A stretch of DNA of 64,000 bases from IMGVR_UViG_3300026484_000007:186001-250000; one strand, 5' to 3'; shown: positions 258-49,491, counted from the stretch's first letter. Numbers and translations: made by a program. Notes: a model not told the origin generated them from the letters alone.

Positions 258-318
258 AAAACTTGATTTTCTATGTAGCATCTTTTTTAGATACTAAGGA
301 TATATACGAGTTCTAAAA
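258..318. repeat. half copy of ~130-bp intergenic repeat (arm A), candidate phage promoter
   Basis: AAAACTTGATTTTCTATGTAGCATC...GTTCTAAAA matches copies at 2234, 12225 and others. Confidence 0.85.
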
Positions 319-330
319 TTTTCTATAGAT

Positions 331-375
331 TTTTTCTGACGACAAAAAAATTGCTCGGTTAACGAGCAATTTTTA
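331..375 (-). terminator. intrinsic terminator with conserved TTTTTTGTCGTCAGAAAAAA tail
   Basis: ATTGCTCG/CGAGCAAT hairpin followed by T-tract on minus strand, just after stop of 387..1145. Confidence 0.8.
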
Positions 376-386
376 TTTTATCTTTT

Positions 387-1145
387 TTATCTTAATAAAT
401 TTATAAAATCTTTTTCGATATATAATTTTACTAAATTATTTAATTTTTCCGCTGATGTTCTATTAATTATATTCTTAAATATTTCTGTATAGTATTGTTG
501 CTTTCTTGTTTGATCTTCAAGAATATCTACAGAATATCCCAATTCACCTTTTTTCGTAATTTTTGAAAATGATTTTAATGATTTGATTAAATTATTTAAT
601 TTTTCTATTGAATAATCTAAAGATTCTATAATGCTTGTTCTTAAAAACGAATCGTGTGTTTCATAAAATTGAAATTCGTCTCTTGCTTGCGAAAGCGTTT
701 CTATTCCTGCTTTTTCAAGGACTTTGCTAATTGCAATATACGGTAAAAATAACATTACAAAATGTATTAATTTTTTTATAAGAAAACGTTTTTCTGAAGA
801 ATTAGATAATTGAAATTGAAAATCTTCAACTCCGATGCTTAAATAATTTTCATCAATTTTATGTAACCACGGTAAAAAGAATCTTTTCCAGAAAAATTCG
901 AATTCATTGTCATTTAACTTATCCAGATCATCTTCAAAAATATTAAAATTGAAATTTTGAATATCTAAATCTCTAAGATATTCTAAATCTTTATCTAAGA
1001 AATACATTATATCTTCTGATGGTTTTCGAGCCTCAAATGGAGTGATATCAAAATCTTCTCCATCGAAATTTATTTGATAAGAGATGAAAGGAGCCCCTAA
1101 ACTATCTTTAACTCCATTATTTTCTAATATTAAATCTTGAGTCAT
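387..1145 (-). CDS. hypothetical protein
   Basis: 252-aa ORF, no recognised motif. Confidence 0.7.
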   Translation of the reverse strand: MTQDLILENNGVKDSLGAPFISYQINFDGEDFDITPFEARKPSEDIMYFLDKDLEYLRDLDIQNFNFNIFEDDLDKLNDNEFEFFWKRFFLPWLHKIDENYLSIGVEDFQFQLSNSSEKRFLIKKLIHFVMLFLPYIAISKVLEKAGIETLSQARDEFQFYETHDSFLRTSIIESLDYSIEKLNNLIKSLKSFSKITKKGELGYSVDILEDQTRKQQYYTEIFKNIINRTSAEKLNNLVKLYIEKDFINLLR

Positions 1146-2160
1146 ACTTCGATCCTTTTTTAATTTTTATTATTTTTTTGATTTTTCTTGATTTTAAATC
1201 TTTTTTATGAAGTCTTGCCGCTAAATCTATATGAGCTAAATCAGAAGAGGATAAAACTAAACCATTCTCTTTACCGATTTTTACTGATTTAGCGGAAAGT
1301 AATTTATTCTGAATCTCTTTAGTGATCTTTTTTAGATCACTAAAATCAACTCCAGTTTTTTCTTTAATTATTTTCCATTCAGCAAATTTACGATAGTTTC
1401 GTAATCGTTTTAAAGCTTTAAGATGATCGTATTTATTTAATATAACCGCTTCATAAGCTAAAACCATAATACTATTATGATTTCCTATCATTGTATAATT
1501 TCCATCATTTTCTATATAAAAAACTCCATTTCTAAATTCTTTTTTAGCGTATTCATGAAATTCCATGATTTCATGATATTTAGAAATACTTCTATCTAAC
1601 TCAATCCATAAACGATGTTCGAACGGACCACCCATATGTTTATCTTGATATAAAAAGAAACGATCGAAAAAAGATACTTCAGGAATAACGATGAATAATA
1701 AATGGATTCGGTATTCTTTTTCTTTCGATGTTTTTGAATTTTCTCCGATATTTTCTTCAATAAGCGAAAATTCATAAAAATAAAAAGCTGGTGCTTTTAT
1801 AATTTCAGAAGCTAATTTTTTATAATCCGATGGTAAAACGCCTGGAAATTGTTTATTTATTTTTTCAAAATAATTTAATATATCTTTTTTAGATTCAAGA
1901 ATCGGTACGATCGGAATATTGTATTCTTTGAGCTTATCGAAAGAATCTTTATAATTTTTTTTATAAATTTCGATTCCTTCATTTAAAAGTTTTTTACTTT
2001 CTTTATCTATAAAATCTATGGCTTTTTTAATTTCTTCTCTAAGATTCTTCGTATAAATTAATGGATTAAAAATATTTTCAGTTAATAAAATTTTATTTTT
2101 GGATGCGTTATTTATATAATTTATATAATTCGTATAATTGACTAATGAAGATTTTCTCAT
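1117..2160 (-). CDS. hypothetical protein, possible virion protein
   Basis: 347-aa ORF with AAGGA RBS; N-terminal LLTE/LLNE candidate processing sites. Confidence 0.7.
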   Translation of the reverse strand: MRKSSLVNYTNYINYINNASKNKILLTENIFNPLIYTKNLREEIKKAIDFIDKESKKLLNEGIEIYKKNYKDSFDKLKEYNIPIVPILESKKDILNYFEKINKQFPGVLPSDYKKLASEIIKAPAFYFYEFSLIEENIGENSKTSKEKEYRIHLLFIVIPEVSFFDRFFLYQDKHMGGPFEHRLWIELDRSISKYHEIMEFHEYAKKEFRNGVFYIENDGNYTMIGNHNSIMVLAYEAVILNKYDHLKALKRLRNYRKFAEWKIIKEKTGVDFSDLKKITKEIQNKLLSAKSVKIGKENGLVLSSSDLAHIDLAARLHKKDLKSRKIKKIIKIKKGSKYDSRFNIRK

Positions 2161-2233
2161 TATTATTCCTTTTTTGGCTTAGTTTTTTAATTATGATTCG
2201 ACGAGTCAACGAAGTCTAAAGTTTTAAACGCAA

Positions 2234-2361
2234 AAAACTTTGATTTTCTACGTAGCATCTTTTTTAGATACAAGCGATATAAAAGCAGTTCTAAAATTTT
2301 TAGAACTCGTATATATCTTTAGATATCTATAGAAGCGCAACGTTTTGGAAACTCAAGTTTT
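2234..2361. repeat. ~130-bp intergenic repeat, full copy
   Basis: AAAACTTTGA...TCAAGTTTT ends, central GTTCTAAAA/TTTTAGAAC inverted repeat. Confidence 0.9.
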
Positions 2362-2378
2362 CAATAAAAATTATATCG

Positions 2379-2441
2379 AAAACTTTGATTTTCTACGTAG
2401 CATCTTTTTTAGATCTTCCGCGATATATACGAGTTCTAAAA
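2379..2441. repeat. half copy of ~130-bp repeat (arm A)
   Basis: near-identical to 2234-2296. Confidence 0.85.
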
Positions 2442-2495
2442 CAATTATGAAAAACTAAAAATTAAGAATTTTTTTAATAAAATAAGGAGATTAAA

Positions 2496-3107
2496 ATGCA
2501 GAAAATAAAAAATGATATTGATTTAATATCAGATGAAATAAAAAATGAACTGAAACTGATCGAATCAAATCTTTATGCTTTATTCGATTCAAATGATCAT
2601 TCTGACGAACTTTATCAAAAAATTTTAAACATGCAAGACGATATACTTAATAATCCATTTTTCATCGAGCATGGTTTAAGTCAAGAATTTAATAAATTAT
2701 TTAAAATTCTTATTTTTTTAAGTTCTAAAATTGACACAAATGATAAAGAATTCAAGAAAAAAATGTTTGATATCTTAAGCAAATTCAAAGAGAATAAAGA
2801 AAAAAGCGTTGAACTTTCTAAGTATTATATTGAATATTTAAATGAACTTTTAAAATTAATTGAAGATTTAAAAAAAGAAAAAGAAAAAGAAAAGGCAAAT
2901 AAAGATCCAATAAATTACAAAGGAATAAATAAATTTTTATTTATTGTAAAAAATTTATTAATTTATTTATTTAATTCTAAACCAGTACAAGTTCTTTTTA
3001 GTGTATCTTTGGTAGTAGCATTTTTGTATGGTTTAAAAACATTTGACGTAAATTTCTATCAAGAATTTATTGAGTTATTTAAAACTATTCATAAAATATT
3101 TTTATAA
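2496..3107 (+). CDS. hypothetical coiled-coil protein with C-terminal hydrophobic helix
   Basis: AAGGAG RBS; VLFSVSLVVAFLYGL segment. Confidence 0.7.
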   Translation: MQKIKNDIDLISDEIKNELKLIESNLYALFDSNDHSDELYQKILNMQDDILNNPFFIEHGLSQEFNKLFKILIFLSSKIDTNDKEFKKKMFDILSKFKENKEKSVELSKYYIEYLNELLKLIEDLKKEKEKEKANKDPINYKGINKFLFIVKNLLIYLFNSKPVQVLFSVSLVVAFLYGLKTFDVNFYQEFIELFKTIHKIFL

Positions 3108-3119
3108 AAAGGAGTTCTA

Positions 3120-3971: not shown

Positions 3972-3972
3972 A

Positions 3973-5687: not shown

Positions 5688-5724
5688 ATATAAAATTAAA
5701 TATAAAATTAAATAAGGATTTTTT

Positions 5725-6450: not shown

Positions 6451-6535
6451 AAATCTAACTCATGATCTTTTTAAGATCATTAATCATACACGAATAAACA
6501 AACGATTAAAATTAATTGTTTTTAAGGAGAACTTT

Positions 6536-7291: not shown

Positions 7292-7329
7292 AAAATATAA
7301 AAAAATATAAAAAAAATATAAAAATTATA

Positions 7330-7373
7330 AAAGTGATCCTTCCTGGATCACTTTTTTTGTCGTTAGAAAAAAA
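7330..7373 (+). terminator. intrinsic terminator with conserved tail
   Basis: AAAGTGATCC-TTCCT-GGATCACTTT hairpin + TTTTGTCGTTAGAAAAAA. Confidence 0.85.
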
Positions 7374-7396
7374 CGAAGATCAAAAAGGAAAAAATT

Positions 7397-11212: not shown

Positions 11213-12169
11213 ATGCCTAAACAATATCAACCTTTTTTAAGCACGATTGATGCTGCTTACAAAGATCTTCGATTTAAAATCGAAGGACGAGAACCGAAAA
11301 AAGTTATCGAAGAAGGTTTATTTCCTGAACCACCAGCGCAACCAACTAGAAAAATGGATCCTATTTCCAATGATTCTGATTCATCTAATATAGCTGGAAA
11401 ACTTGGACTAACGTTAGGTGGTCTTGGTCTAACAGCTTATGGAGCAAATGAATATTTTGATTCAAATGATGCGACTGATACACTTACGCAAGCTAAAGCA
11501 GATGCAAATGAAGTAGTCGATAAAGAAGTTCAAGCGAAAACGCAAGCAAATGTAAAAGATATAAATAATTTCCTTGCTACAAATAATCTAAATAAAATTC
11601 CTGAATATCATTCTAATAATTCTACAGTTTTTGCGAATACAAAAGAATCCGATTTAGCTCATAAACTTTACGTGGGTGGAGAAGGAATTGATACTGATTT
11701 TGAAAAAGCTTTAAATAAGTACCATCACGGAAATAAAGCATTAGTTGACTGGTTAACGAACACTGACGGTGGTTTCGAATGGGATAAATTATGGAAAGGA
11801 TCTTATGATTCTACTAGAAATAATTTATTAGAACAGTTAAAAGAAGCTAAAGCATATGCTGCTGGAAAACCAGTACCACTTAAAATGGGTCATTTAATTG
11901 ATTGGGGATTACATAATCCAGACAATGGAGCAGACGCATCCTCTCAAGCATATTGGGAAAGAGTAGCGAATGAAATACAATCGAAAATTAATAAATTGGA
12001 CGCAGCGGAACAAGAAATGGTTCATAATCTTAAACAACAATACTACGACAAATACATGGATGAACAATTGAAAGATAAATTACTTGCTTTCGATAAAGCT
12101 CATGGAGGCACTGGTAAATTTGATACAGTCGAAGAATTACGAGAATATCTTAAAAAACATAAAGGGTGA
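11213..12169 (+). CDS. glycine-zipper protein
   Basis: VIEE|G; GLTLGGLGLTAYG followed by hydrophilic domain. Confidence 0.75.
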   Translation: MPKQYQPFLSTIDAAYKDLRFKIEGREPKKVIEEGLFPEPPAQPTRKMDPISNDSDSSNIAGKLGLTLGGLGLTAYGANEYFDSNDATDTLTQAKADANEVVDKEVQAKTQANVKDINNFLATNNLNKIPEYHSNNSTVFANTKESDLAHKLYVGGEGIDTDFEKALNKYHHGNKALVDWLTNTDGGFEWDKLWKGSYDSTRNNLLEQLKEAKAYAAGKPVPLKMGHLIDWGLHNPDNGADASSQAYWERVANEIQSKINKLDAAEQEMVHNLKQQYYDKYMDEQLKDKLLAFDKAHGGTGKFDTVEELREYLKKHKG

Positions 12170-12205
12170 TCCTCTTTGGATCACTTTTTTTGTCGTTAGA
12201 AAAAA
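12165..12205 (+). terminator. intrinsic terminator with conserved tail
   Basis: GTGATCC-TCTTT-GGATCAC + TTTTTTTGTCGTTAGAAAAAA. Confidence 0.85.
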
Positions 12206-12224
12206 TCCATAGAAAAACTTTTGA

Positions 12225-12351
12225 AAAACTTTGATTTCTACGTAGCATCTTTTTTCGATACAAGCGATATAAAAGCAGTTCTAAAATTTTTAGAACTGCT
12301 ATATATCTTTGTGTATCTATCGTTGATCAACGTTCTGGAAACACAGTTTTT
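12225..12351. repeat. ~130-bp intergenic repeat
   Basis: same orientation and near-identical to 2234-2361. Confidence 0.9.
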
Positions 12352-12424
12352 CAAAAGTTTTTTGCGTCCAGTTTTCTCCATCGTATCTCCTTAAACAATT
12401 TAAAAAATAAATTAAGGAGATCTA

Positions 12425-22213: not shown

Positions 22214-22354
22214 AAAAACTCGTGATCCTAAAACGTTGAGCATCTATAGATACACAAAGATATATACGAGTTCTAAAACTATCTTTAAAATTTTAGAACT
22301 GCTATATATCGCGGAAGATCTAAAATAGATGCGACGAAGAAAATCAAAGTTTTT
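22214..22354. repeat. ~130-bp intergenic repeat, reverse orientation, longer central spacer
   Basis: GTTCTAAAA-ctatctttaaaa-TTTTAGAAC core; ends AAAATCAAAGTTTTT. Confidence 0.9.
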
Positions 22355-22406
22355 CAAGTTTAAAAATTAGAATTTAAATAATTTAAATATATTTAAAAGG
22401 AAAAAG

Positions 22407-23012
22407 ATGTTATATATAATTAATTTATTTGGAGGTCCTGGTTCAGGTAAAAGTACTACAGCAGCATCTTTATTTGGAGCAATGAAATCTTTAAAGAAAC
22501 AAAAAGAATCTTTTTTAGATCAATATCAAATTGAATTAGTAACTGAATTTGCTAAAGATAAAGTATACGATTTTCATCATATATGTTTAGAAAATCAATT
22601 TTTTACTAGTGGAAATCAATATCATAGAATGTGGAGAGTAATTAATTTTTGGAATTATCATAATTATAAAAATGGAATTATAATTACAGATTCGCCTATA
22701 ATAAATGGTATATTTTATGATACTCATCCAAAAAAGGAATTACTCAAAAAAGTTTTAATCGAATACTCTGAATTCGACGAATACAAAAACAATTTTGCTG
22801 GACTTGAACAATTTAATTATTTATTAATAAGAGATCATGATTTTGAACAATCTGGAAGACTTCAGACTTCAGAAGAATCTGATAAAATTACGAATGATAT
22901 TAAAAAATTTTTTAATAAAAATAATAAGGATCTTTTAGAGATTCAAACTTCAAAAGCTCAAGAATTTATTTTGAATGATATTTTAAAAAATATAAAAAAG
23001 GAAAAAACATGA
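22407..23012 (+). CDS. P-loop nucleoside/nucleotide kinase-like ATPase (NadR/AAA_28-like)
   Basis: INLFGGPGSGKST, ELVTEFAK, ITDSP, GRLQ. Confidence 0.8.
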   Translation: MLYIINLFGGPGSGKSTTAASLFGAMKSLKKQKESFLDQYQIELVTEFAKDKVYDFHHICLENQFFTSGNQYHRMWRVINFWNYHNYKNGIIITDSPIINGIFYDTHPKKELLKKVLIEYSEFDEYKNNFAGLEQFNYLLIRDHDFEQSGRLQTSEESDKITNDIKKFFNKNNKDLLEIQTSKAQEFILNDILKNIKKEKT

Positions 23013-29151: not shown

Positions 29152-29535
29152 CTTTCTTTATCAGGCGATAAAAATCGAATAATCCCGCCTGACTGGAGCG
29201 AAATACCAGTCACAAAATTATTTTACATGGGTTAAAATAAGGAGATCGCACTGAAGATGCGCTTTTATAATTACACCAAAAACGAAGGTTCGATTCCTTC
29301 CTTTCCCAACATAATAGGGAAAGTAGCCAAGAGGTAAGGCATTGGTTCCAAAATATAAATATATAACAATCGAACGAAAAGTTCAAAGTAAAAAATTTAA
29401 AATTTAATGCTTAAATACTAACTACTAAAAATTAACCTTCAAAATTTAAAATAAAAAGCTTTTTAAAATCTTGGAGGAAGTTTTAAGTGGCGAGGATTAG
29501 CCCGATTTTTGATCCAAGCTGCTTGATAGAGAAAG
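29152..29535 (+). ncRNA. large structured ncRNA with permuted tRNA-like domain and 7-nt periodic tract
   Basis: closing stem 29152-29166/29521-29535 with two G-U pairs; AAAAATCG/CGATTTTT, TAATCC/GGATTA, CGCC/GGCG; possible pseudoknot CTTGGA/TCCAAG; no ORF; terminator follows. Confidence 0.8.
29275..29346 (+). ncRNA. circularly permuted tRNA-like domain (no anticodon loop)
   Basis: ACCAA-aaac-GAAGG TTCGATT CCTTC-CTTTCCC-A, linker ACATAATA, GGGAAAG-TA-GCC AAGAGGTAA GGC-A-TTGGT. Confidence 0.85.
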
Positions 29536-29540
29536 ACTTC

Positions 29541-29584
29541 AAAACCCTCGCATAGTGCGAGGGTTTTTTTGTCGTTAGAAAAAA
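29541..29584 (+). terminator. intrinsic terminator with conserved tail
   Basis: AAAACCCTCGCA-TAG-TGCGAGGGTTTT + TTTGTCGTTAGAAAAAA. Confidence 0.9.
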
Positions 29585-29626
29585 TTAGATAAAATTAGAA
29601 AAATAAAAAAATTTTGTAAATAAAAT

Positions 29627-29701
29627 CTATGGGGAGCAATGCTCCCCATAGGGGGACTTTGTCCCCCTTGGAGGAGTGGAGACTTTTCGTCTCCACTCCT
29701 C
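29627..29701. repeat. GC-rich triple-hairpin cassette, copy 1
   Basis: CTATGGGGAGC-AAT-GCTCCCCATAG, GGGGGAC-TTT-GTCCCCC, GAGGAGTGGAGAC-TTTTC-GTCTCCACTCCTC. Confidence 0.85.
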
Positions 29702-29708
29702 TCTTTCT

Positions 29709-29747
29709 GCTATTTATATATCAATTAAAACTAAAGCAGTTCTAAAA
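29709..29747 (-). promoter_or_regulatory. candidate phage promoter TTTTAGAAC-N16-GATAT-N5-TAGC
   Basis: same bipartite motif at 29927, 30559, 31287. Confidence 0.55.
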
Positions 29748-29777
29748 AATCTCCGTAAATAAAATTACAAATAAAAT

Positions 29778-29920
29778 CTATGGGGAGCATTGCTCCCCAT
29801 AGGGGGACTTTGTCCCCCACTCACTGGGGTGGTTGCCCACATTGGCAACGGGAGCAATCCCGCTCATTTGAGCGGGGCCCGACCACCCCGGAGGACTCAC
29901 CTCCTTTCTTGGAGTCCTCC
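29778..29920. repeat. GC-rich hairpin cassette, copy 2, with multibranch domain
   Basis: same first two hairpins, then GGGGTGGT/ACCACCCC enclosing small hairpins, then GGAGGACTC/GAGTCCTCC. Confidence 0.85.
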
Positions 29921-29926
29921 TTTTTT

Positions 29927-29965
29927 GCTAATTAAATATCTGATAAAACTAAAGCAGTTCTAAAA
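29927..29965 (-). promoter_or_regulatory. candidate phage promoter
   Basis: minus strand TTTTAGAACTGCTTTAGTTTTATCAGATATTTAATTAGC. Confidence 0.55.
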
Positions 29966-30380: not shown

Positions 30381-30434
30381 AAAACTCCGGAGTTCTAAAA
30401 TAGAGCTCTGGAGTTTTTTTGTCGTTAGAAAAAA
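30381..30434 (+). terminator. terminator with conserved tail, overlapping a GTTCTAAAA box
   Basis: AAAACTCCGGAGTTCT-AAAAT-AGAGCTCTGGAGTTTT + TTTGTCGTTAGAAAAAA. Confidence 0.8.
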
Positions 30435-30476
30435 TTAGAAAAAATTAGAAAAAATAAAAAAATTTGCAAATAAAAT

Positions 30477-30551
30477 CTATGGGGAGCAATGCTCCCCATA
30501 GGGGGACTTTGTCCCCCTTGGAGGAGTGGGGAATTTTCATCTCCACTCCTC
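30477..30551. repeat. GC-rich triple-hairpin cassette, copy 3 (part of ~185-bp direct repeat 29564-29748 / 30414-30598)
   Basis: near-identical to copy 1 including flanks. Confidence 0.85.
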
Positions 30552-30558
30552 TCTTTCT

Positions 30559-30597
30559 GCTATTTATATATCTAATAAAACTAAAGTAGTTCTAAAA
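30559..30597 (-). promoter_or_regulatory. candidate phage promoter
   Basis: minus strand TTTTAGAACTACTTTAGTTTTATTAGATATATAAATAGC. Confidence 0.55.
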
Positions 30598-30644: not shown

Positions 30645-31265
30645 TTAAGCCTCCGATTGATGCTTTTTAAGCAATTTATCGAAGGCTTTCAGATACCTAC
30701 TAATCTTGACAATATACACAATTGTCGCCCCTGAAATTATCCCGAATAGGAGTATAACTCCATTGTCGGGCAACTTCAGGTATGAATAGCCCATTAATAA
30801 TAGGGCCACAACCAATTGCACTCTCGAGCGCGCTTTATTCACGTCACTCGAAAACGTCTCCGCCTCTTCTGAATTCAGCAAGACGTTCGTCAAAACTGAA
30901 TTCATGTTCGCCTGAACGGCGAACAACAATACATACAGCGGAAAGATCAATACGACGATCTTTGCCGCTAATACTCTATCTATCTCCGGATGGAGATAGA
31001 ATAGGTACACTAGAATGCAGAAATACGCTACATCTAGTGTGCTTAATAACACGAAGCTCGCAAAGTAGCTAATTTTGTGTGTTAGCCACTTATTGAACTC
31101 CATCATTGTAGCGCTCATTAGACTAATGAACGCGATAAACCCAACCGAGAACTCACCATAAAGGTGAGACTCAAATGGTTGAATTATTTGGAAAGCTAAG
31201 CTTCCCAGAATAACTATCTTTATTCTTAATGTTAAGAATAAAGACTTCAATACTTCCATCTTCAT
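30645..31265 (-). CDS. multi-pass membrane protein, GC-richer than neighbours
   Basis: AAAGGAG RBS, 5-6 hydrophobic helices. Confidence 0.8.
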   Translation of the reverse strand: MKMEVLKSLFLTLRIKIVILGSLAFQIIQPFESHLYGEFSVGFIAFISLMSATMMEFNKWLTHKISYFASFVLLSTLDVAYFCILVYLFYLHPEIDRVLAAKIVVLIFPLYVLLFAVQANMNSVLTNVLLNSEEAETFSSDVNKARSRVQLVVALLLMGYSYLKLPDNGVILLFGIISGATIVYIVKISRYLKAFDKLLKKHQSEA

Positions 31266-31286
31266 CTTTTCTCCTTTGATTTTTTT

Positions 31287-31326
31287 GCTATTTTAGATAT
31301 CTCATAAGCCTTTACCAGTTCTAAAA
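31287..31326 (-). promoter_or_regulatory. candidate phage promoter directly upstream of RBS of 30645..31265
   Basis: minus strand TTTTAGAACTGGTAAAGGCTTATGAGATATCTAAAATAGC. Confidence 0.6.
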
Positions 31327-34375: not shown

Positions 34376-35728
34376 ATGGCTTATGTTTTTAAAAAAGACA
34401 AAAACGGTAAATTAAAATTGATTAAACCATCAACCTCGGCTACCTCAACGACCGACAAAAGTGATCTTTTAAAGATCACTAATTCTCATAATTCTCATAC
34501 TTCACTCAAAAGAACAATTGAGGAAAATTCATCTGCTATTTTAGAAGTTCCTATAGAAAAAGAAACCGAAAAATTTATCGAGACTCGAGACTGGGTAATT
34601 CCAAAAAAATTCATGATGCCAGATTGGGTAGAAAAAAATTTAAAAGACTTTAAAGATCAAGCAAGAGAAATTATCTCAAACGCAGACGAATCTTCTATAG
34701 ATTCAATTAATCCTAAAATTAAAAAATTAATTGAAGAATTAATTCTTGATAATAAAGTTAAACCTAAGTATCCTTTAAATAAAAAGACTCTTGGAAAATT
34801 ATCGAATGAAATGTGGAAAGTCTTCGGTGAAGATGAATTCATGTATCGATATTGGATACTACAAGAAGCTGGATTTTTTCTAAGTACTTTTAAACCATCT
34901 GGATTTGAACCTGAGGCTCTACAATTACCTGAAAAATTCGTTAAAAGAAAAGACGCATTATTAAAAGAATTTGAAAAACGAGTTAAAGAACACGGTAAAG
35001 ATAAAGCGGTAGCTTGGATTGATAAAGAATTTAATAATTTAACCAACGAGGTAATCGATTACTGGGAAGAAAAAGGTATTAACGTTGTAGATATGATTAG
35101 ATCAGGAGCAAGAGGTGGTCCAGCGGATATTAGAAAAATGCTTGTTGCTGTTGGGTTAAGTATTGATAGTTCAGGAAAACCAAACGACGTTATTATGACG
35201 TCACAAATCGAAGGTTTATCTCAAACTCAATTCTTTCATTATTCTTCACAAGCAATTATGGCATTATATGCAAAATCTTCAGAAACTGCTGTTCCAGGTT
35301 ATCTTGCAAGAAAATTAAGTACAGTTGCGGACGCGGTAAATCTTTCAGAAGTTGAAGATTGTAAAACGAAGAGATTTTTGGAAGTAACAGTTCTTGATTC
35401 AGATGTTCTTAATGCGTTAGATGGTAGAGTATTGCATACAGGTAAAGTTATTGATTCTGAAAAAGATACTAATTTAATTGGTAAAAAAATTAAAATTAGA
35501 TCGCCTTTATATTGTAAGGCAACTGATGGTATATGCGCTACATGTTATAATAAAAAAATTATTCAGAAAATGAATTGGCAGCCTGGAGAAAAAATTGGGT
35601 TGCATGCAGCTACAACTCTTGGAGATCAAGCATTAGTAAACTTAACACTTAAAAAATCTCATGTTGGTCTTTCATTAAATATGGAAACCGTAGATTTAGA
35701 AAAAGATATTTTTCAATTCGCAGAGTGA
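34376..35728 (+). CDS. RNA polymerase beta' middle fragment (funnel, bridge helix, trigger loop)
   Basis: MIRSGARG, TAVPGYLARKL, RSPLYC...GICATCY, GEKIGLHAATTLG...LTLKKSHVG. Confidence 0.92.
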   Translation: MAYVFKKDKNGKLKLIKPSTSATSTTDKSDLLKITNSHNSHTSLKRTIEENSSAILEVPIEKETEKFIETRDWVIPKKFMMPDWVEKNLKDFKDQAREIISNADESSIDSINPKIKKLIEELILDNKVKPKYPLNKKTLGKLSNEMWKVFGEDEFMYRYWILQEAGFFLSTFKPSGFEPEALQLPEKFVKRKDALLKEFEKRVKEHGKDKAVAWIDKEFNNLTNEVIDYWEEKGINVVDMIRSGARGGPADIRKMLVAVGLSIDSSGKPNDVIMTSQIEGLSQTQFFHYSSQAIMALYAKSSETAVPGYLARKLSTVADAVNLSEVEDCKTKRFLEVTVLDSDVLNALDGRVLHTGKVIDSEKDTNLIGKKIKIRSPLYCKATDGICATCYNKKIIQKMNWQPGEKIGLHAATTLGDQALVNLTLKKSHVGLSLNMETVDLEKDIFQFAE

Positions 35729-35779
35729 TCTTTTTTAGATCACTCTCTAGCTTTTTTTGTCATTAGATAATTTTTCCTG

Positions 35780-35918
35780 AAAACTCGTGATCTTAAAACG
35801 TTGAGCTTCATTAGATATCTAAAGATATATACGAGTTCTAAAATTTATAAAACCGTTTTAGAACTCGTATATATCCTTAGCATCGAAAAAAGATGCTACT
35901 TGAAAAATCAAAGTTTTT
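35780..35918. repeat. ~130-bp intergenic repeat, reverse orientation
   Basis: GTTCTAAAA...TTTTAGAAC core; follows terminator 35722-35770. Confidence 0.9.
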
Positions 35919-35974
35919 CTTTTTCATTTTTTAAAAAATTGAATTTTTTAAACGAAGCCAAAAAAGGATTTTTT

Positions 35975-40047: not shown

Positions 40048-40152
40048 AAACTTATAAAGTTTAAAAGTGATCTAAAAAAGATCACTTTTAATTTTTTTTG
40101 TCTTTAGCAAAATTTTAGCGAAGTTCTATCGAAGTCAATAAAAAAACTTTTG

Positions 40153-40281
40153 AAAACTTGAGTTTCCAGAACGTTGAGCTTCTATAGATATCTAAAGATA
40201 TATAGCAGTTCTAAAAATTTTAGAACTGCTTTTATATCGCTTGTATCTAAAAAAGATGCTACGTGGAAAATCAAAGTTTTT
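40153..40281. repeat. ~130-bp intergenic repeat, reverse orientation
   Basis: near reverse complement of 2234-2361; follows terminator 40061-40112. Confidence 0.9.
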
Positions 40282-40343
40282 CAAGTTTTAAATTTAAAAA
40301 AATACAAAGAAAGAAAAAGAAAGAAAATTAAAAGGATAGTTAA

Positions 40344-42020: not shown

Positions 42021-45000
42021 ATGATCAAAAAAGATACGTCTGATGCTACATTAAAATTAAAATCTGCAAAATTTTATATAGATTTTCATAATGAAAAAAA
42101 TAATAAATTATTTTTTTATGAAGTTTATTCTAAGAAAAAAGGAACTGCTGGAGCAGAGCGTCTCGAATACGCTTATATGACTCCAGACGACGAAGTGATC
42201 TTTTACAAACCCATCGATGATATCGAAGAGCATGAAATACCAAAGAAAGATCTTCGAGAGTTTCTTCTTGGTAGAATTAATAGCATAGCGATGTTAAAAT
42301 TAGGAGCTAGAGTTGATATTAAATCAAAATCTTCTAAACCTACTTTTAAAATTAAAGCGTTGAGCAATGAACCCGAAGTAATTCTTTTTGCTAGTATTAT
42401 TTTAGGATTAAGACCTGCGCTAGATTTCATGGGAATAAAGTATAGTTTTAATAAGACTAAAGAAGGTTATAAATCTATAAAACTATCCACTCAAGATGGT
42501 AAAACTAAATATTTTAATATTTATGCTAACTCTTTATACGATGAATACGTTTTAAATGGAATGTCTTCTTTTATTAAGAAAATTGAATTCACTGAAGAAA
42601 ATTTATCTTCTAAAGATGTATTCATAACTTATTTCGATAATCGTTTTGGTAAAGGTTTATTTAATTCTTATAATCAAAAGTTAGTATCTTTTATAGATAC
42701 AACGACTGAGCAAATTTTAAGATCGTATGGTTATAGTACGGATCCATTAAAATTATTATGTATAACTATGCCTAAGAAAATACTAAACGAAGCAGTCGAT
42801 GATATCGATAATCTTGAAAATAAAAGAATTAGAATGGCTGAAAGTATTGCTCACTCAGCTTATAATGCAGTTTCGCAAGCTCTTGTAAAATTCAAGAAAG
42901 AATCTAAATTAGATAACGTTAAATTACATATTCAAAAAGATTATATTATTAATAATCTTATTAACACTGGTATGGTTCAATGGAGTAATCCAGTTAACCC
43001 ATTAGAAGAATTAACTACTTCTGCAAAAATTACTAAAACTGGGGTTGGGAATCCATTAAAAGAACAGATCACTATAGACAAAAGGGATCTTAATGAAAGT
43101 TATTTTGGAGTTGTATCTGCGACACATACTAATGAGTACGGTGGAATAGGTTTAAACCAAACTCTCGTAAATAAAATGATGATCAAAGATAGATTCGGAA
43201 GTATTTTAATTAAAAAATTCCAAGATACTAATCCTTTTGAAATACTAAGTCCAATTGAAAGTATTGCTCCATTTATGGATACAGATGATACTACTAGAAA
43301 AGTTATGGGGAATCAGCAAACCTCACAATTCATTCAAGTTAAAAATCCAGATGTTCCTCTTGTTCAAACTGGTTTTGAAGCTTATATACCTTATATAGTA
43401 TCTGATAGATTTGCAATGAAAGCTAAAAAACCTGGAACTGTTAAATTAGAAAAAGACTATATTATAATGAAATACAATGATGGTTCTGAAGAAATCTTTA
43501 GTACTAAACCCACTAAAGCGAGAACTAAAAGAGGTCTTTATATTCCAATTGAATATAACGTTCTTGTAAAAGATGGTCAAAAAGTAAAAGAAGGAGAAAT
43601 CCTTGCAGCAACTAATTCTTTAAAACACGGAAAATTAGGTATAGGAAAAAATTTAGTAGTCGCAGAAATGTCTTATCGAGGTATGAATTACGAAGATGGT
43701 TGGGTAATATGCGAAGACCTTAAAGAAAAATATCAAAGTTCTTTATATGAAAAAATTACTATAATTATTCCAGAAGGTGCTAAGATTCAAGATTTTAATA
43801 TTGAATTAAATAAAAACACTAAACCTGGAGAAAAATTAATTTCGTATGTTACAAACGCAACTGAGTCTTTAGAATTCGATGAAGAAAATAGTATTACTGA
43901 TGAAAATACTGATGATTTAAGTACAGGTAAAGAGATTAGAGGTAATACAGTAACTTACTATAGTATCGGTGGACAAATTGCAGATTTTGTAATAAAATTA
44001 AATTCTACTAAAATTGATAAAAAAATTATAGAAAAATTTAAATTTCAAAATTCAGAAATTGAAAAAAAATTAAAGATTTGCGAAAAACTCAAAAATGAAA
44101 TTAATAAATTAGATTGTAGAGATAACATTGAACATCTTGAAGCTCTTGAAGTTGGTGGACATAAAGCAAATAAAATGGAGCCAGAAGGAGCGATTATTGA
44201 AGTCTATATCGAAACAGAAAATCCAATCAGAAACGGATCAAAATTTACTTTAGCGAGTACTGGTGGTAAAGGTACTGTACAATACATTATTGATAAAGAT
44301 AAAAAACCTTATACAAAAGAAACTGGATTAGAAATTGATTTTATTGCGACTCCGTTGTCAATCATTTCAAGAAAAAACCCAAGTATTATTTTACAATTGT
44401 ATCTTGGAAAAGTAATTTATTTTCTAAATAAAAAAGTTGAAGAATTAGCTAAAGAAAATAAAATTTCTTCGGTTAGAACTTTAATTACTAAAGTATTTGA
44501 AAGAATTGATAAATCAGATGATAAAGTTTATCTAAATCAATTAAAAGGATTCTTAAAAAATAAAGATGATTTTCTTAAAAAATATATTTTAAAACATGAT
44601 CCTTTAAATAACCCAGCTTTCCCAGCAATTATGCCTCCATTCGGAAGTAAATTAAGTACGAAAGATATCGAAGATGCTGCAGATATTCTTGGAATTCCTT
44701 TACAAGAACATGTAATAATTCCAGAAGAAGATAATAAAGAGACTAAATATAAAGTTACTGTTGGAATTATGCCAGTATTTTATTTAGAACATTTTCCAAA
44801 AGCTATGTCAGGGGTAAGAGGAAGTATTAATGTTAAAAATCAATTAACGACTGGACAAGGTCGTGCCGGAACTAAAGAAGGAAACGGAGCAATTAAACTT
44901 GGTTTATATGATATGTTTTCCGTTACATCAAGACGAGCAAATAAGTTCATTAAAGAAATGTGGGCAGTAAAATCAGATGATTACGAAGCGAAAAAAGAAC

Positions 45001-45140
45001 TTCGAAAGAAAATCATTAAATCAGCCGAAACTGGCGAAGAAATAAATGTTTCTGATATTGAAGTAAAACCAGAAGATATTACTACCAAAAAATTGATTGA
45101 AGCATATTTTTATGGAGCATGTTTGCAGCCACGTTTCTAA
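42021..45140 (+). CDS. RNA polymerase beta main fragment
   Basis: HTNEYGGIGL, DDTTRKVMGNQQTSQ, GMNYEDG, GSKF...GGKGTV, SRKN, LEH, KSDD. Confidence 0.95.
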   Translation: MIKKDTSDATLKLKSAKFYIDFHNEKNNKLFFYEVYSKKKGTAGAERLEYAYMTPDDEVIFYKPIDDIEEHEIPKKDLREFLLGRINSIAMLKLGARVDIKSKSSKPTFKIKALSNEPEVILFASIILGLRPALDFMGIKYSFNKTKEGYKSIKLSTQDGKTKYFNIYANSLYDEYVLNGMSSFIKKIEFTEENLSSKDVFITYFDNRFGKGLFNSYNQKLVSFIDTTTEQILRSYGYSTDPLKLLCITMPKKILNEAVDDIDNLENKRIRMAESIAHSAYNAVSQALVKFKKESKLDNVKLHIQKDYIINNLINTGMVQWSNPVNPLEELTTSAKITKTGVGNPLKEQITIDKRDLNESYFGVVSATHTNEYGGIGLNQTLVNKMMIKDRFGSILIKKFQDTNPFEILSPIESIAPFMDTDDTTRKVMGNQQTSQFIQVKNPDVPLVQTGFEAYIPYIVSDRFAMKAKKPGTVKLEKDYIIMKYNDGSEEIFSTKPTKARTKRGLYIPIEYNVLVKDGQKVKEGEILAATNSLKHGKLGIGKNLVVAEMSYRGMNYEDGWVICEDLKEKYQSSLYEKITIIIPEGAKIQDFNIELNKNTKPGEKLISYVTNATESLEFDEENSITDENTDDLSTGKEIRGNTVTYYSIGGQIADFVIKLNSTKIDKKIIEKFKFQNSEIEKKLKICEKLKNEINKLDCRDNIEHLEALEVGGHKANKMEPEGAIIEVYIETENPIRNGSKFTLASTGGKGTVQYIIDKDKKPYTKETGLEIDFIATPLSIISRKNPSIILQLYLGKVIYFLNKKVEELAKENKISSVRTLITKVFERIDKSDDKVYLNQLKGFLKNKDDFLKKYILKHDPLNNPAFPAIMPPFGSKLSTKDIEDAADILGIPLQEHVIIPEEDNKETKYKVTVGIMPVFYLEHFPKAMSGVRGSINVKNQLTTGQGRAGTKEGNGAIKLGLYDMFSVTSRRANKFIKEMWAVKSDDYEAKKELRKKIIKSAETGEEINVSDIEVKPEDITTKKLIEAYFYGACLQPRF

Positions 45141-45176
45141 ATTATAAGTATTTAGAAGATTTAGAAGGAGTCGACA

Positions 45177-46178: not shown

Positions 46179-46226
46179 AAAATGGTAAAAACGATAAAAA
46201 TGGTATATTAAATTAAGGATTTAATA

Positions 46227-47420
46227 ATGATTATTACACACAATTATTATATTGATTTTTTTAAAGCCTTTAATCAGTTTCTTAAAAAGATTCTTGATCC
46301 TCGCGCTTTAAAAGACGGTAGAGGTATTCAAAAAATTGAATACTCTATCGCATCTAAAACACTTCTGAGTCATAAATTATATGGAAATGAATCTTTTGAA
46401 TATCCAAATTTAATTATTGATCTTCAAGATATCCATGCTGACGAAGGTGTAAGTACAATTAAAAATAATGCTTATGGTTTAATTGATAATATTAATACGG
46501 TTTATCTCGCGGATAATCTTGATAAGAATCAGTTTATTAAAGCAGAAATGAAAAAATATATTCTTAATTTTAATATTACTATTAATTTAGAAGAATCTGC
46601 TGATATGTTAAATTTTTATCATTTAATTACGAATCATGTTCCTGTTAATTTTACATTCGTGGATTTTTCATTCTTTTATGGAATAGACATTACTGAGTTT
46701 GTAAATGATGGGAATTGGGATTTTGATAATGATAATATTTTTAACGTATTTAAACAACCTGATCCAACAGAGAGAGATAAAGAGTATTATTATTCTTATT
46801 TAAAAACTCAACCAGAATTAGAATTAACTGGAATTTCTAAAAATGAAGATAAAGAAGGAATGAAGTACAGTATTCAAATGAATTTTCTTGCATCGTTCTT
46901 AATTCCTTCTTATATTTACGGAACGAATTTTATTAACATTGAAAGAATTGTTCTTCAAATAGATACTACTGATAAAGATGATTATCCTATCATCACTGAC
47001 ACAGAAAATATATTTAGTACAAATAAAATTAAAAAAGGATCTTTTTTAGATCCTAATAGTTTTATTTTAAATGAGGAAAACGAATCTTTTGATATAATTT
47101 TGAAAAATGAAGCTAGCGATGAAGAAACTTTAAATTCATTAAAACAATTTAATTATATTTTAAAACTCGAACCTGATCTTTTGGAGATCTTTTCTCAAAA
47201 AACTCCACATAAGACAGAGAAAAGATTAAATCTTTATTTAGAGAATTTTGAAATTGTATCTGAAGAAGATAAAACAATACTGAGAATCACTAAAGAATCT
47301 CAAAAGACGCATTTTTCTTTATTAGAAGATTTTTTTATAAATTATATAAACTATATAAAAAATGAGGAGAGCGAATCTTCTCAATTTTACAACTTTCAAT
47401 TATTTTATGCGGAGAAGTGA
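46227..47420 (+). CDS. hypothetical protein, possibly tail completion/structural
   Basis: 397 aa; YPNLIIDL and YILNFNITI pattern; weak. Confidence 0.55.
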   Translation: MIITHNYYIDFFKAFNQFLKKILDPRALKDGRGIQKIEYSIASKTLLSHKLYGNESFEYPNLIIDLQDIHADEGVSTIKNNAYGLIDNINTVYLADNLDKNQFIKAEMKKYILNFNITINLEESADMLNFYHLITNHVPVNFTFVDFSFFYGIDITEFVNDGNWDFDNDNIFNVFKQPDPTERDKEYYYSYLKTQPELELTGISKNEDKEGMKYSIQMNFLASFLIPSYIYGTNFINIERIVLQIDTTDKDDYPIITDTENIFSTNKIKKGSFLDPNSFILNEENESFDIILKNEASDEETLNSLKQFNYILKLEPDLLEIFSQKTPHKTEKRLNLYLENFEIVSEEDKTILRITKESQKTHFSLLEDFFINYINYIKNEESESSQFYNFQLFYAEK

Positions 47421-47482
47421 TCTTTTTTAGATCACTTTTTAACCAACTATAAAATTCTAGAAAATTAATTAAGGAGATTTAA

Positions 47483-48316
47483 ATGTCAAAATATTCTGAA
47501 ATCTTAGGGCAACTTATTAATGAAAATATAAGCAAAGCTCATGATTATATCACAAATCAATTAATTATGGAACATCTTTTAAAAACTGGTAAAGTTACAA
47601 TTGAAGAAGCTCAATTATTCAATCAAATGACGTATTCAGTGCTTTATGAAAGTTCTCATTTAATGGTACCAACAGTTGAAGAAATTCAAGAAGCGATGAT
47701 GCCACCTGCGCCAGCTCAAATGGGTGCGCCAGCTCCAGGAGCAGCAGGAGAGGAACCAGTTCCAGCAATGAACGAAGCGCCAGCTCCAGCTCCAGCAGAT
47801 GGAATTCCAAATGAGGGAGAACCAAGTCCTCAAGAAATTCAAGCTGCAATCGATGGTGGAGAAGCTCCAGCAGGTTTAAAAACATTAGTTGATCCAGAAA
47901 CAGGAGAAAAATTTCAATTTGATCCAACAAGCGGATCTGTAATGCCTGAAGCTAAAGACGACATGCCAGTACCAGGAGATACAATGGGAGATTCTGCAGA
48001 ACCAGTTCCAGCCCCAGAAGCAGAACCAGCAGCTCCAACAGATGAACCAGCAGCTCCAACTGATCAAGCAGGTTTACCTAAAAAAGACGTAAGTGCTAGC
48101 GAAGGAAATGTTGAAGAATCTACTGCTGCAGAAGCTACAGCAGCTACTGCGGAAGAATCTAAAAAAGATCAAAATATTGAAGAATCTGCGAATGTAGACG
48201 CTTCTGCAAAAGAAGAAGCAAAAGAAGAAGCAAAAGAAGAAGCAAAAGAAGAAGCAAAAGAAGAATTAAATGAAAATGAATTACTAGTTCAATCATTAAT
48301 GAATCTTATAAAATAA
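47483..48316 (+). CDS. acidic Pro/Ala/Glu-rich prohead core/scaffold-like protein
   Basis: many (L/I/V)xE sites; EEAK x5 encoded by 12-bp tandem repeat. Confidence 0.65.
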   Translation: MSKYSEILGQLINENISKAHDYITNQLIMEHLLKTGKVTIEEAQLFNQMTYSVLYESSHLMVPTVEEIQEAMMPPAPAQMGAPAPGAAGEEPVPAMNEAPAPAPADGIPNEGEPSPQEIQAAIDGGEAPAGLKTLVDPETGEKFQFDPTSGSVMPEAKDDMPVPGDTMGDSAEPVPAPEAEPAAPTDEPAAPTDQAGLPKKDVSASEGNVEESTAAEATAATAEESKKDQNIEESANVDASAKEEAKEEAKEEAKEEAKEELNENELLVQSLMNLIK

Positions 48317-48347
48317 GATAAAATAATATTTTTAAAAGGATTAAATT

Positions 48348-48710
48348 ATGGAAAACAATCCTACTATAGTAGATAAGGTACTTTCGAAGATTATCTTCGA
48401 AAACCTTATTAAAAACGGAAAAGTTACTTTAGAAGAAGCTCAAATCATCAATGAAGCAATTATCGAAATCGTTGATAGATATAATCATACTATTATTGAA
48501 GAAACTGCAAAAATCAATACTTTAATGAATGTTCAAAATTCTCAGCCTCAGCAACCTCAACAACCTCAAATTAATGAAGCTGAAATGAATAGAATACTTC
48601 AAAGTATTGAGGAAGCAGCAATCGAAGCTACACAAAACAATCAAAAAATTATTGAAGAATCTGAAGAAATGTCAATTGCAGAAAAACTTGCATCTAAAGT
48701 TTTAAAATAA
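48348..48710 (+). CDS. prohead core-like protein, paralog of 47483 N-terminus
   Basis: LIKNGKVTLEEAQ versus LLKTGKVTIEEAQ. Confidence 0.7.
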   Translation: MENNPTIVDKVLSKIIFENLIKNGKVTLEEAQIINEAIIEIVDRYNHTIIEETAKINTLMNVQNSQPQQPQQPQINEAEMNRILQSIEEAAIEATQNNQKIIEESEEMSIAEKLASKVLK

Positions 48711-48746
48711 TTTTTAAAAAAATAAAAATCAAATTAAGGAGTACTA

Positions 48747-49255
48747 ATGAATTACTTTGAAAGAGTAAAATTACATGAAATTTGCGAAAGTGTAAAAGAA
48801 ACTTATCTTTTAAATAGCATCGAAGAAAATGCTAATGAAATCGAAGTTCTAAGAACTAAAAAATTCTTAACTGAAACATTTAATACAATTGAAAAATTAT
48901 TAATTGAAGAAGCAATTGCTGATGGTGTAAAAAAAGCAGCAATTATTGGAGCAGCAGGGTTAGCTGGAACAGCTGCAGGTTATGAACTTGGTCATGCTGC
49001 TGATGCAGGGGAATTAGCAGCGGGAAAGTAATTGATCCAGCTGCCCCAGAAGAAGTTGTAGTTGATAAAAATTTAATTACTGCAGATGACGTTGAAAAGC
49101 GAGAGATGAATGCTTTTGCGTTATCTGACTTATACAAACTTGCTCAGCAAAATCCTAATGCTGTTTTATATGGAGGAGCGTTAGGAACAGCTGGGTTAGC
49201 TTCTGGTGCAGTCGCTGCTCAAGCAATGAATTCTCAGAATCCAAGAAGTAGATAA
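48747..49255 (+). CDS. glycine-zipper protein read through a -1 frameshift (94-aa short form ends 49031; ~169-aa long form)
   Basis: G GGA AAG TAA at 49022-49031; -1 frame open to TAA 49253-49255 and encodes second zipper YGGALGTAGLASG. Confidence 0.7.
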
Positions 49256-49352
49256 AAATTATAAAAATATGGAGTTGTGATCTTTTTTAGATCGCTCTCC
49301 AGTTTTTTTGTCGTTAGAAAAAATTCTGAAAAAATTCTGAAAAAAATTATAA

Positions 49353-49491
49353 AAAACTTGAGATTCGCGGACGTTGCGCTTCTGTAGATATCTAAAGATA
49401 TATAGCAGTTCTAAAATTATCAGAGTGGTTTTAGAACTCGTATATATCTTTGTGTATCCAAAATAGATGCTACATAGAAAATCAAGTTTTT
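49353..49491. repeat. ~130-bp intergenic repeat, reverse orientation
   Basis: GTTCTAAAA-ttatcagagtgg-TTTTAGAAC core; follows terminator 49270-49323. Confidence 0.9.

What the first reader, a model, noticed from the sequence alone, without database searches (positions are those of the whole stretch)
258..49491. Family of ~130-bp intergenic elements with a central inverted GTTCTAAAA/TTTTAGAAC box
Seen: six full copies (2234, 12225, 22214, 35780, 40153, 49353) and two half copies (258, 2379), most directly after a terminator and before an operon. Each has two distinct conserved arms, short inverted ends AAAACT(T)TGA/TCAAGTTTT and a variable central spacer. Arm A points into the adjacent gene in 7 of 8 copies. 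Inference: back-to-back promoters for the phage RNAP (sense plus antisense), or a non-autonomous mobile or recombination element.
Basis: partly seen in the sequence, partly recalled or inferred. Interest (0 to 1): 0.62.

Follow-up and report, generated by a model that had tools for sequence, protein, structure and literature searches.

The report
Back-to-back phage promoter modules
An uncultivated 273-kb hydrothermal-vent jumbo phage that encodes its own RNA polymerases carries, at 22 operon boundaries, a conserved ~130-bp module that most likely is two promoters placed back to back, one reading into the next operon and one reading backwards towards the previous terminator.

Summary
Genome-wide (272,602 bp, 27% GC, two sets of multisubunit RNAP genes) there are 22 pairs and 9 unpaired arms, all intergenic.

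Each arm starts at the central 9-bp box TTTTAGAAC and runs outward for about 65 bp. There are two arm types, A' and B', and every A'/B' pair has one of each.

About 20 simpler promoters in this genome use the same box. They read box, 16 nt, GATATATAAATAG, then either RBS-ATG at 61-64 nt or a small hairpin-rich RNA unit. Three related phages have the same two-part design. This fixes the reading direction as box to arm, so the pairs are divergent.

One arm always faces an RBS-ATG. In same-direction gene contexts the other arm faces the upstream terminator.

There are no target-site duplications, no copies in other genomes, no conserved RNA structure and no co-evolution between partner arms. No RNA data exist, so start sites and the polymerase involved are inferred.

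Verdict: a lineage-specific bidirectional promoter cassette, a new variant of a known kind.

The parts
256..318 (-). Unpaired A' arm. The box is at 310-318 and the arm is read leftwards. It is followed by an RBS and the ATG at 227 of a minus-strand gene.
   Evidence: On the minus strand the order is terminator (about 340-370), GTCGTCAG, box, A' arm, AAAGGAG, ATG. The box is 91 nt from the ATG.
2234..2364 (.). Pair 1, in a divergent intergenic region. A' (box 2288-2296, read leftwards) faces minus-strand gene 1117-2160. B' (box 2298-2306, read rightwards) faces gene 2496-3107. The spacer is 1 nt.
2379..2441 (-). Second, unpaired A' arm (box 2433-2441, read leftwards). It lies in tandem, 145 bp from the A' of pair 1.
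12224..12354 (.). Pair 2. A' (box 12278-12286, leftwards) faces the upstream terminator. B' (box 12288-12296, rightwards) faces the large terminase gene at 12425. The spacer is 1 nt.
12166..12205 (+). Terminator hairpin, then T7, GTCGTTAG and an A-run, immediately upstream of pair 2. The backward-facing arm reads into it.
22215..22355 (.). Pair 3. B' (box 22270-22278, leftwards) faces backwards. A' (box 22291-22299, rightwards) faces the thymidylate kinase gene at 22407 and the RNR operon. The spacer is 12 nt.
35780..35920 (.). Pair 4. B' (box 35835-35843, leftwards) faces terminator 35722-35746. A' (box 35856-35864, rightwards) faces the gene at 35975. The spacer is 12 nt.
40153..40283 (.). 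Pair 5. B' (box 40208-40216, leftwards) faces terminator 40061-40091. A' (box 40218-40226, rightwards) faces gene 40344 and the RNAP beta gene 42021-45140. The spacer is 1 nt.
49353..49493 (.). Pair 6. B' (box 49408-49416, leftwards) faces the terminator and GTCGTTAG at 49310. A' (box 49429-49437, rightwards) faces the gene at 49636. The spacer is 12 nt.
29705..29747 (-). Simple (C-type) promoter: box, 16 nt, GATATATAAATAG. It lies upstream of a hairpin-rich unit of about 85 nt (about 29625-29705, minus strand) that ends in an intrinsic terminator.
29923..29965 (-). C-type promoter upstream of a hairpin-rich unit of about 150 nt (about 29770-29925, minus strand).
30555..30597 (-). C-type promoter upstream of a second copy (94% identical) of the ~85-nt hairpin-rich unit.
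   Evidence: (family D3).
31284..31326 (-). C-type promoter, 61 nt from box to the ATG of minus-strand gene 30645-31265.

Best explanation
Each ~130-bp element is a pair of divergent promoters for a phage-encoded transcription machinery. Each half begins with the 9-bp upstream box TTTTAGAAC. Next comes a 16-bp AT-rich segment containing T(A/T)T(A/T)TATC. Then comes a class-specific block: GTATCTAAAAAAGATGCTAC in A', and GTATC.A..GA.GC..AACGT in B'. The arm ends near ..CAA(A)GTTTT, about 65 bp from the box. Transcription would start either about 26 or about 41 nt from the start of the box and run outward, so the rest of the arm is a conserved untranslated leader. One arm feeds the downstream operon. 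In same-direction gene contexts the other arm fires back towards the upstream gene's terminator. That gives either a short RNA or antisense transcription. Shown here: the family, its positions, its orientation relative to genes, the fixed spacing, and the presence of the box in simpler promoters of this phage and three relatives. Inferred: promoter activity, start sites, which RNAP or factor reads the box, and what the backward arm is for. My guess for the backward arm is an insulator or supercoiling-coupled helper of the forward promoter, or a short regulatory RNA.
For: (1) Direction. About 20 simpler promoters read box, 16 nt, GATAT(A/T)TAA(A/T)TAG. They lie a constant 61-64 nt before the ATG of small clustered genes, or before hairpin-rich units that end in terminators. 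The same two-part design occurs in relatives: G001 has 13 copies before tRNAs and small RNAs, G005 has 6 copies, and L010 has 2. An AT-rich conserved motif near -10 is the known signature of jumbo-phage virion-RNAP early promoters (PMC7598289, PMC5312081). (2) A' and B' carry G(T/A)AT(C/A)TAA at the same 16-nt distance from the box. (3) Unpaired A' arms sit as terminator, box, arm, RBS, ATG. At genome 4700 the ATG is only 63 nt from the box; at window 318 it is 91 nt. (4) Every pair has one arm facing an RBS-ATG 75-332 nt away. At the 3 divergent junctions both arms do. (5) All 22 pairs are intergenic, although only 8.6% of the genome is. (6) The phage has two sets of RNAP beta and beta-prime genes, and sigma-70-like matches are not enriched: 74 found against 87 expected. 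(7) Backward-facing arms are as conserved as forward-facing ones: 0.885 against 0.883 for A', and 0.846 against 0.883 for B'. (8) Spacer length is constrained. It is 1 nt in 13 pairs and exactly 12 nt in 6 pairs with 6 different sequences. It is 20 nt in one pair. Box centres are therefore about 10, 21 and 29 bp apart, near whole helical turns.
Against: There is no transcript evidence at all: no RNA run holds this phage. Sixty-five bp of conservation is far more than any known phage promoter needs. The backward arm has no obvious product. A' and B' do not sort genes into clean functional or temporal classes. B' precedes terminase and the tail sheath operon, but also topoisomerase II, DNA ligase and NAD-salvage operons. 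A' precedes DNA polymerase, helicase, clamp loader, RNR and RNAP beta operons. The AT-rich palindromic sequence makes similarity arguments about direction weak on their own. The paired arrangement is absent from every relative examined, so comparison cannot confirm its function.
Confidence: 0.6

Rival explanations
1. Operator or insulator. The 19-bp perfect palindrome (GTTCTAAAA, 1 nt, TTTTAGAAC) is the binding site of a dimeric phage DNA-binding protein, either a global repressor, a roadblock or an activator. The arms are extended contact or architectural DNA. Transcription of the downstream operon starts elsewhere, for example at the GTCGTTAG motif after the terminator.
For: The central inverted repeat is perfect. 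Spacer lengths of 1, 12 and 20 nt keep both boxes on one face of the helix. The module sits between the terminator-linked GTCGTTAG motif and the RBS in about 17 of 19 same-direction contexts. Sixteen GTCGTTAG copies precede an RBS directly, with no module in between.
Against: Single boxes (half sites) are common. At a fixed 16 nt from an AT-rich -10-like block, they precede genes and small RNA units in this phage and in relatives. An operator does not explain 65 bp of conservation on each side, or two distinct arm types. This rival is partly compatible with the main explanation, since a dimeric activator could serve both promoters.
Confidence: 0.15
2. Primarily a mobile or recombination cassette. 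This could be a MITE-like element, or a PeSL-like composite terminator/promoter repeat whose main role is to mediate gene shuffling.
For: There are many copies with terminal inverted repeats. The cassette occurs in both orientations, and the 12-nt spacer inverts with it: genome 21840 against 250309. Tandem copies lie 145-156 bp apart. Variant sub-segments are mosaic among copies. Contigs of related strains break or mis-join at the elements. PeSLs are a precedent (PMC2839356, PMC4122927).
Against: There are no target-site duplications and no transposase link. The family is found in no other genome. Every copy is at an operon boundary with an arm correctly placed before an RBS. The joints have short sides and are typical of repeat-induced assembly artefacts. 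No clean empty site was seen.
Confidence: 0.1
3. RNA- or DNA-level hairpin. Read-through transcripts fold the two arms into a long imperfect hairpin that is an RNase III-type processing site or a terminator. Alternatively, the DNA extrudes a cruciform, as an origin or a hairpin promoter.
For: Single strands of all six window elements fold far better than shuffles, with z from -3.6 to -7.2. The 1-nt-spacer centre scores as a terminator-like hairpin on both strands.
Against: Partner arms pair no better than arms taken from different elements: mean -42.8 against -43.4 kcal/mol, permutation p = 0.73. Neither arm has a consensus RNA structure. Unpaired arms and pairs of A' with a simple promoter cannot form the hairpin, yet they are equally conserved. 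There is no Rfam match.
Confidence: 0.05
4. Convergent promoters. Each arm is read from its outer end (AAAACTTTGA..) towards the centre, so that starts lie near GTTCTAAAA.
For: The block GATATATAGCAG just before the box resembles the -10-like block of the simple promoters when read inward. The half copy at 2379-2441 points at gene 2496 in this sense.
Against: The unpaired arms at window 256-318 and genome 4700 would then point away from their adjacent genes and into a terminator. The simple promoters and all three relatives read from box to AT-rich block to gene. No box lies at the required distance upstream of the inward block.
Confidence: 0.05

Closest known systems
[quoted passage not shown]
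   Same: Both are highly conserved AT-rich motifs that can be found by sequence analysis alone, upstream of operons in a phage carrying two multisubunit RNAPs. The simple box-N16-GATATATAAATAG promoters here fit that description. They precede clusters of small genes, each with its own promoter.
   Different: The known motifs are about 10-20 bp, single and unidirectional. They have no described upstream box and no 65-bp conserved downstream part. The A'/B' modules are paired back to back and precede replication, packaging and structural operons alike. Which polymerase reads them is unknown.
PeSLs, the composite promoter-terminator cassettes of T4-like phages (PMC2839356, PMC4122927)
   Same: Both are short repeated regulatory cassettes that combine a terminator stem-loop and a promoter at gene-module boundaries. 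They are similar enough in sequence to recombine. Here the terminator, T7-GTCGTTAG and the module form a comparable composite.
   Different: PeSLs use host sigma-70 early promoters, are unidirectional, and are defined by flanking indels between close relatives. No such indels could be shown here, and the host polymerase is probably not involved.
Intergenic repeats of halovirus HF2 that carry promoters (PMC8707807)
   Same: Both are families of conserved intergenic repeats (58 and 29 bp in HF2) with AT-rich promoter motifs at conserved positions. Counter-transcripts were observed in HF2, and that genus has one complex bidirectional promoter region.
   Different: HF2 is an archaeal virus that uses host transcription. 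Its repeats are not systematically arranged as inverted pairs.
Divergent (back-to-back) promoter pairs of bacteria and phages, which can be coupled through local negative supercoiling (stated from general knowledge, not tested here)
   Same: In both, two promoters share an upstream region and fire in opposite directions. The spacing leaves room for two polymerases.
   Different: Here the pair is a repeated cassette of fixed sequence, present 22 times. In most copies one of the two directions has no gene.

Membership tests
Jumbo-phage virion-RNAP early promoter | A highly conserved AT-rich motif of about 10 nt centred near -10, repeated upstream of presumed early operons | tested here: met
   This is met for the simple (C-type) promoters. 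GATAT(A/T)TAA(A/T)TAG occurs about 20 times, 61-64 nt before the ATGs of small clustered genes. For A' and B' only an AT-rich block at the same distance from the box is seen.
Jumbo-phage virion-RNAP early promoter | A transcription start a few nt downstream of the motif, and transcription independent of new protein synthesis | not testable with these tools
   No RNA run holds this phage, and the host is uncultivated.
Jumbo-phage virion-RNAP early promoter | The phage encodes two multisubunit RNAPs | tested here: met
   Beta homologues lie at genome 229539 and 117585-119240. Beta-prime homologues lie at 124566-125875, with a weak one at 218270.
PeSL-type composite promoter-terminator cassette | A terminator stem-loop joined to a promoter in one repeated unit | tested here: met
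   A hairpin, T7, GTCGTTAG and then the module occur in about 17 of 19 same-direction contexts.
PeSL-type composite promoter-terminator cassette | Insertions, deletions or replacements between close relatives are bounded by the cassettes | tested here: inconclusive
   Contigs of related strains break at the elements. Some join one element to another, but with short sides typical of assembly artefacts.
PeSL-type composite promoter-terminator cassette | A host sigma-70 early promoter consensus | tested here: not met
   There is no sigma-70 consensus in the arms, and sigma-70-like matches are not enriched.
MITE or other non-autonomous transposon | Target-site duplications flanking terminal inverted repeats | tested here: not met
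   The ends are inverted, but the flanks show no direct repeats.
MITE or other non-autonomous transposon | Copies in other genomes, or presence/absence polymorphism | tested here: not met
   IMG/VR gave 0 hits for the paired core and 10 chance hits inside genes for the box plus AT block. In 596 Gb of prokaryote genomes there were 4 isolated palindromes. Relatives showed none above control. No clean empty site was seen.
Structured RNA element (Rfam family, RNase III site) | A match to a curated model, or a conserved secondary structure with covariation | tested here: not met
   There is no Rfam match at gathering score. RNAalifold predicts no pairs in either arm. Partner arms do not co-vary.

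The most novel reading that the evidence does not exclude
The two faces of the module are read by different forms of the phage transcription machinery: virion against non-virion RNAP, or one RNAP with different factors. A shared box-binding factor would sit on one face of the helix. Every operon boundary would then carry a switch that fires forward at one stage and backward at another. That would make a genome-wide temporal toggle or insulator built from one repeated cassette. It would also provide the first non-early promoters of an RNAP-encoding jumbo phage that can be read straight from the sequence.
Probability: 0.15. Interest if true: 0.75.

Novelty: new variant of a known kind. Interest (0 to 1): 0.5.

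Why it matters
For phiKZ- and AR9-type phages, only the early promoters can be found by sequence analysis. Middle and late promoters are short or unrecognisable (PMC7598289). This phage offers long, sharply defined candidate promoters of three kinds that share one upstream box. It also has two RNAP gene sets that could be expressed and tested on them in vitro without culturing the host. If the backward-facing arms are active, the genome would be a natural example of systematic bidirectional promoter cassettes at operon boundaries. That bears on how giant phages insulate operons and use antisense transcription.

Tried and rejected
- RNA evidence: no RNA run holds the phage, so start sites could not be mapped.
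- Reads of related strains (900 letters, within the operators' limit): only contigs were available. They break at the repeats, depth there is inflated, and the joints have short sides. This gave no verdict on presence or absence.
- Searches for the family elsewhere: IMG/VR gave 0 for the paired core. The box plus AT block gave 10 hits, all single and inside coding sequence. The metagenome scan returned the genome itself and distant relatives only. Prokaryote genomes gave 4 isolated palindromes.
- Phage GenBank by DNA: no match.
- Rfam: nothing at gathering score, and only weak chance hits at E up to 1.
- RNA structure in the arms: none.
- Co-evolution of partner arms: none.
- Target-site duplications: none.
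- Assigning A' to middle genes and B' to late genes by function: rejected, because both precede mixed functions.
- A host sigma-70 reading: not supported.
No alternative genetic code was used.
Full report
CONTEXT. The window is bases 186001-250000 of a single 272,602-bp contig with 27% GC. The contig is Ga0256837_1000001, from a hydrothermal-vent metagenome. It is a jumbo phage. It has a T4-like portal, a large terminase, ribonucleotide reductase and a primase-helicase. It also has DNA polymerase, helicase, clamp loader, topoisomerase II, ligase and a tail sheath. It carries two sets of multisubunit RNAP genes. Beta homologues lie at window 42021-45140 and genome 117585-119240. Beta-prime homologues lie at genome 124566-125875, with a weak one at 218270. 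The nearest GenBank phages share only about 22-27% identity in RNAP beta: Staphylococcus S6, Yersinia phiR1-37, Fusobacterium JD-Fnp and PBS1. IMG/VR relatives reach 42-49%.

OBSERVATION. The central inverted box occurs six times in the window, against none in shuffles. The six elements align over about 130 bp. Each consists of two related but distinct arms of about 65 bp, which I call A' and B', joined head to head at the boxes. The two half copies are lone A' arms. Across the genome there are 22 A'/B' pairs and 9 arms without an A'/B' partner (8 A', 1 B'). Two of those lone A' arms are in fact paired with a simple promoter. Every pair contains exactly one A'. All pairs lie in the 8.6% of the genome that is intergenic. 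The box 9-mer occurs 75 times in the genome. My own estimate from base composition predicts about 9.

DIRECTION. Three lines of evidence show that an arm is read from the box outward.

First, about 20 simpler units read box, 16 nt, GATAT(A/T)TAA(A/T)TAG. All but one lie on the minus strand. They sit a constant 61-64 nt before the ATG of small genes clustered at 166.8-167.4 and 171.9-174.8 kb. Others sit before hairpin-rich units that end in an intrinsic terminator, including three in the window at about 29625-29705, 29770-29925 and 30470-30555.

Second, relatives have the same two-part design. G001 (281 kb) has 13 copies of cTTTAGAAT-N12-TATAAATATATTA before tRNAs and small RNAs. G005 has 6 copies of CTTTA(A/T)AAT, then about 16 nt, then GATATATTATAAT. 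L010 has two copies of TTTAGAAC-N16-GATATTA.., one of them followed by RBS-ATG. A conserved AT-rich block near -10 is the published signature of virion-RNAP early promoters in such phages (PMC7598289; AR9 consensus in PMC5312081).

Third, lone A' arms sit in the order terminator, GTCGTTAG, box, arm, RBS, ATG. At genome 4700 the ATG of the DNA polymerase gene is 63 nt from the box. At window 318 the ATG at 227 is 91 nt away.

A' and B' carry G(T/A)AT(C/A)TAA at the same 16-nt distance from the box as the AT block of the simple promoters.

ANATOMY OF THE PAIRS. Each pair has one arm facing an RBS-ATG 75-332 nt from its box. At the three divergent junctions both arms do. In the 19 same-direction contexts the other arm faces the 3' end of the upstream gene. 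It first crosses TTTTTTCTAACGAC and an A-run, then the upstream terminator hairpin read backwards. In the 20 of 24 backward-facing arms where a hairpin was detected, the hairpin ends 100-169 nt from the box (median 126). Eleven of those 20 have at least 4 T in the next 9 nt, so about half could terminate there. Backward-facing arms are as well conserved as forward-facing ones, so they are maintained or homogenised.

The spacer between boxes is 1 nt in 13 pairs. It is exactly 12 nt in 6 pairs, and also in one pair of A' with a simple promoter. Those 12-nt spacers have different sequences. It is 20 nt in one pair. This places the boxes about 10, 21 and 29 bp apart, close to whole helical turns. 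That points to a constraint on length or helical phase, not on sequence.

In absolute orientation, 16 pairs have A' pointing right and 6 have it pointing left. Relative to genes, A' is the forward arm in 11 pairs, B' in 8, and both in 3.

WHAT THE ARMS ARE NOT. RNAalifold finds no consensus structure in either arm. Single strands of whole elements fold well, with z from -3.6 to -7.2. That is only because the arms are related. Partner arms pair no better than arms from different elements (p = 0.73). There is no Rfam match. There are no target-site duplications. No copies exist in IMG/VR, in prokaryote genomes or in eight related contigs. Sigma-70-like matches are not enriched, while terminator-like sites are: 13 found against 4.7 expected.

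LIMITS. No RNA run holds the phage. Promoter activity, the start site and the polymerase involved are therefore inferred. Two start positions are possible, about 26 or about 41 nt from the box. Contigs of related strains were uninformative, because assemblies break at the repeats. A' and B' do not divide genes into clean functional classes. I therefore cannot say whether they are temporal classes. The role of the backward arm is open. Options are an insulator against read-through, supercoiling-coupled help for the forward promoter, a short RNA, or a by-product of a cassette that works in either orientation. The first two options rest on general knowledge, not on tests here.

COMPARISON AND VERDICT. 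The simple promoters fit the jumbo-phage early-promoter pattern. The paired A'/B' modules resemble PeSL cassettes of T4-like phages, which are composite terminator/promoter repeats, and the promoter-bearing intergenic repeats of halovirus HF2. They differ from both in four ways: they are systematically bidirectional, each side is about 65 bp conserved, they share an upstream box with the simple promoters, and they are confined to this one genome. I file them as a new variant of a known kind. Confidence is 0.6 for the divergent-promoter reading, and higher (about 0.75) for the weaker claim that the arms contain promoters.

Noticed in passing
window 7359-7366, 12192-12199, 29571-29578, 30421-30428, 49310-49317 (+) and 336-343 (-); 36 copies genome-wide: The motif T7-GTCGTTAG-A6 always follows a terminator hairpin, in the sense orientation of the upstream gene. 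Sixteen copies have no module after them and sit 5-25 nt before an RBS. It could be part of the terminator, a processing site, or a compact promoter of another class.
   Followed up: partly
window about 29625-29705, 29770-29925 and 30470-30555 (minus strand); also genome 53.44-53.54 kb, 128.6 kb, 161.0 kb and 174.9 kb: These are hairpin-rich units of 85-150 nt with a simple box promoter and an intrinsic terminator. Two window copies are 94% identical, and three share the same terminal two-hairpin module. They are candidate phage small RNAs. There is no Rfam match.
   Followed up: partly
whole genome; for example window 35725-35743, 40067-40085, 47036-47054: The 14-mer GATCT(T or A)6..AGATC, a hairpin core, occurs about 138 times in 273 kb. 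Most terminators share this same GATC-containing stem. The A' arm contains a degenerate copy (ATCTAAAAAAGAT).
   Followed up: no
window 29282-29351 (+): A tRNA-like 3' part (GGTTCGATTCC T-arm) gives a weak hit to tmRNA models: 22.5 bits, far below gathering score. ARAGORN calls nothing in the window.
   Followed up: no
window 35945-35965; genome about 22095, 30935, 70565 and 193365: A conserved stretch AAACGAAG(C/A)C-A5-GGA lies just upstream of several start codons. It may be a shared translation-initiation or RNA-binding element.
   Followed up: no
G001 (IMGVR_UViG_3300028534_000514), about 45 sites, for example loci L029-L042: This relative has its own family of palindromic intergenic elements. 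The core is GAGCAATTGCTC, with two alternative arm types (GAAAATAATC and AAAAGGAGCAAA). The second type faces a gene start 14-80 nt away. The layout is analogous but the sequence is unrelated.
   Followed up: partly
window 40089-40163: In one related-strain contig (run X2), this stretch between the terminator and pair 5 is replaced by 32 nt that carry a GTCGTCAG motif. The strains therefore differ just upstream of the module.
   Followed up: no
genome 17865-18313 (locus L044): A cluster of five tRNA genes (Arg, Ser, Asn, Thr, Gln) is preceded by GATATATAAAT without a clear box.
   Followed up: no
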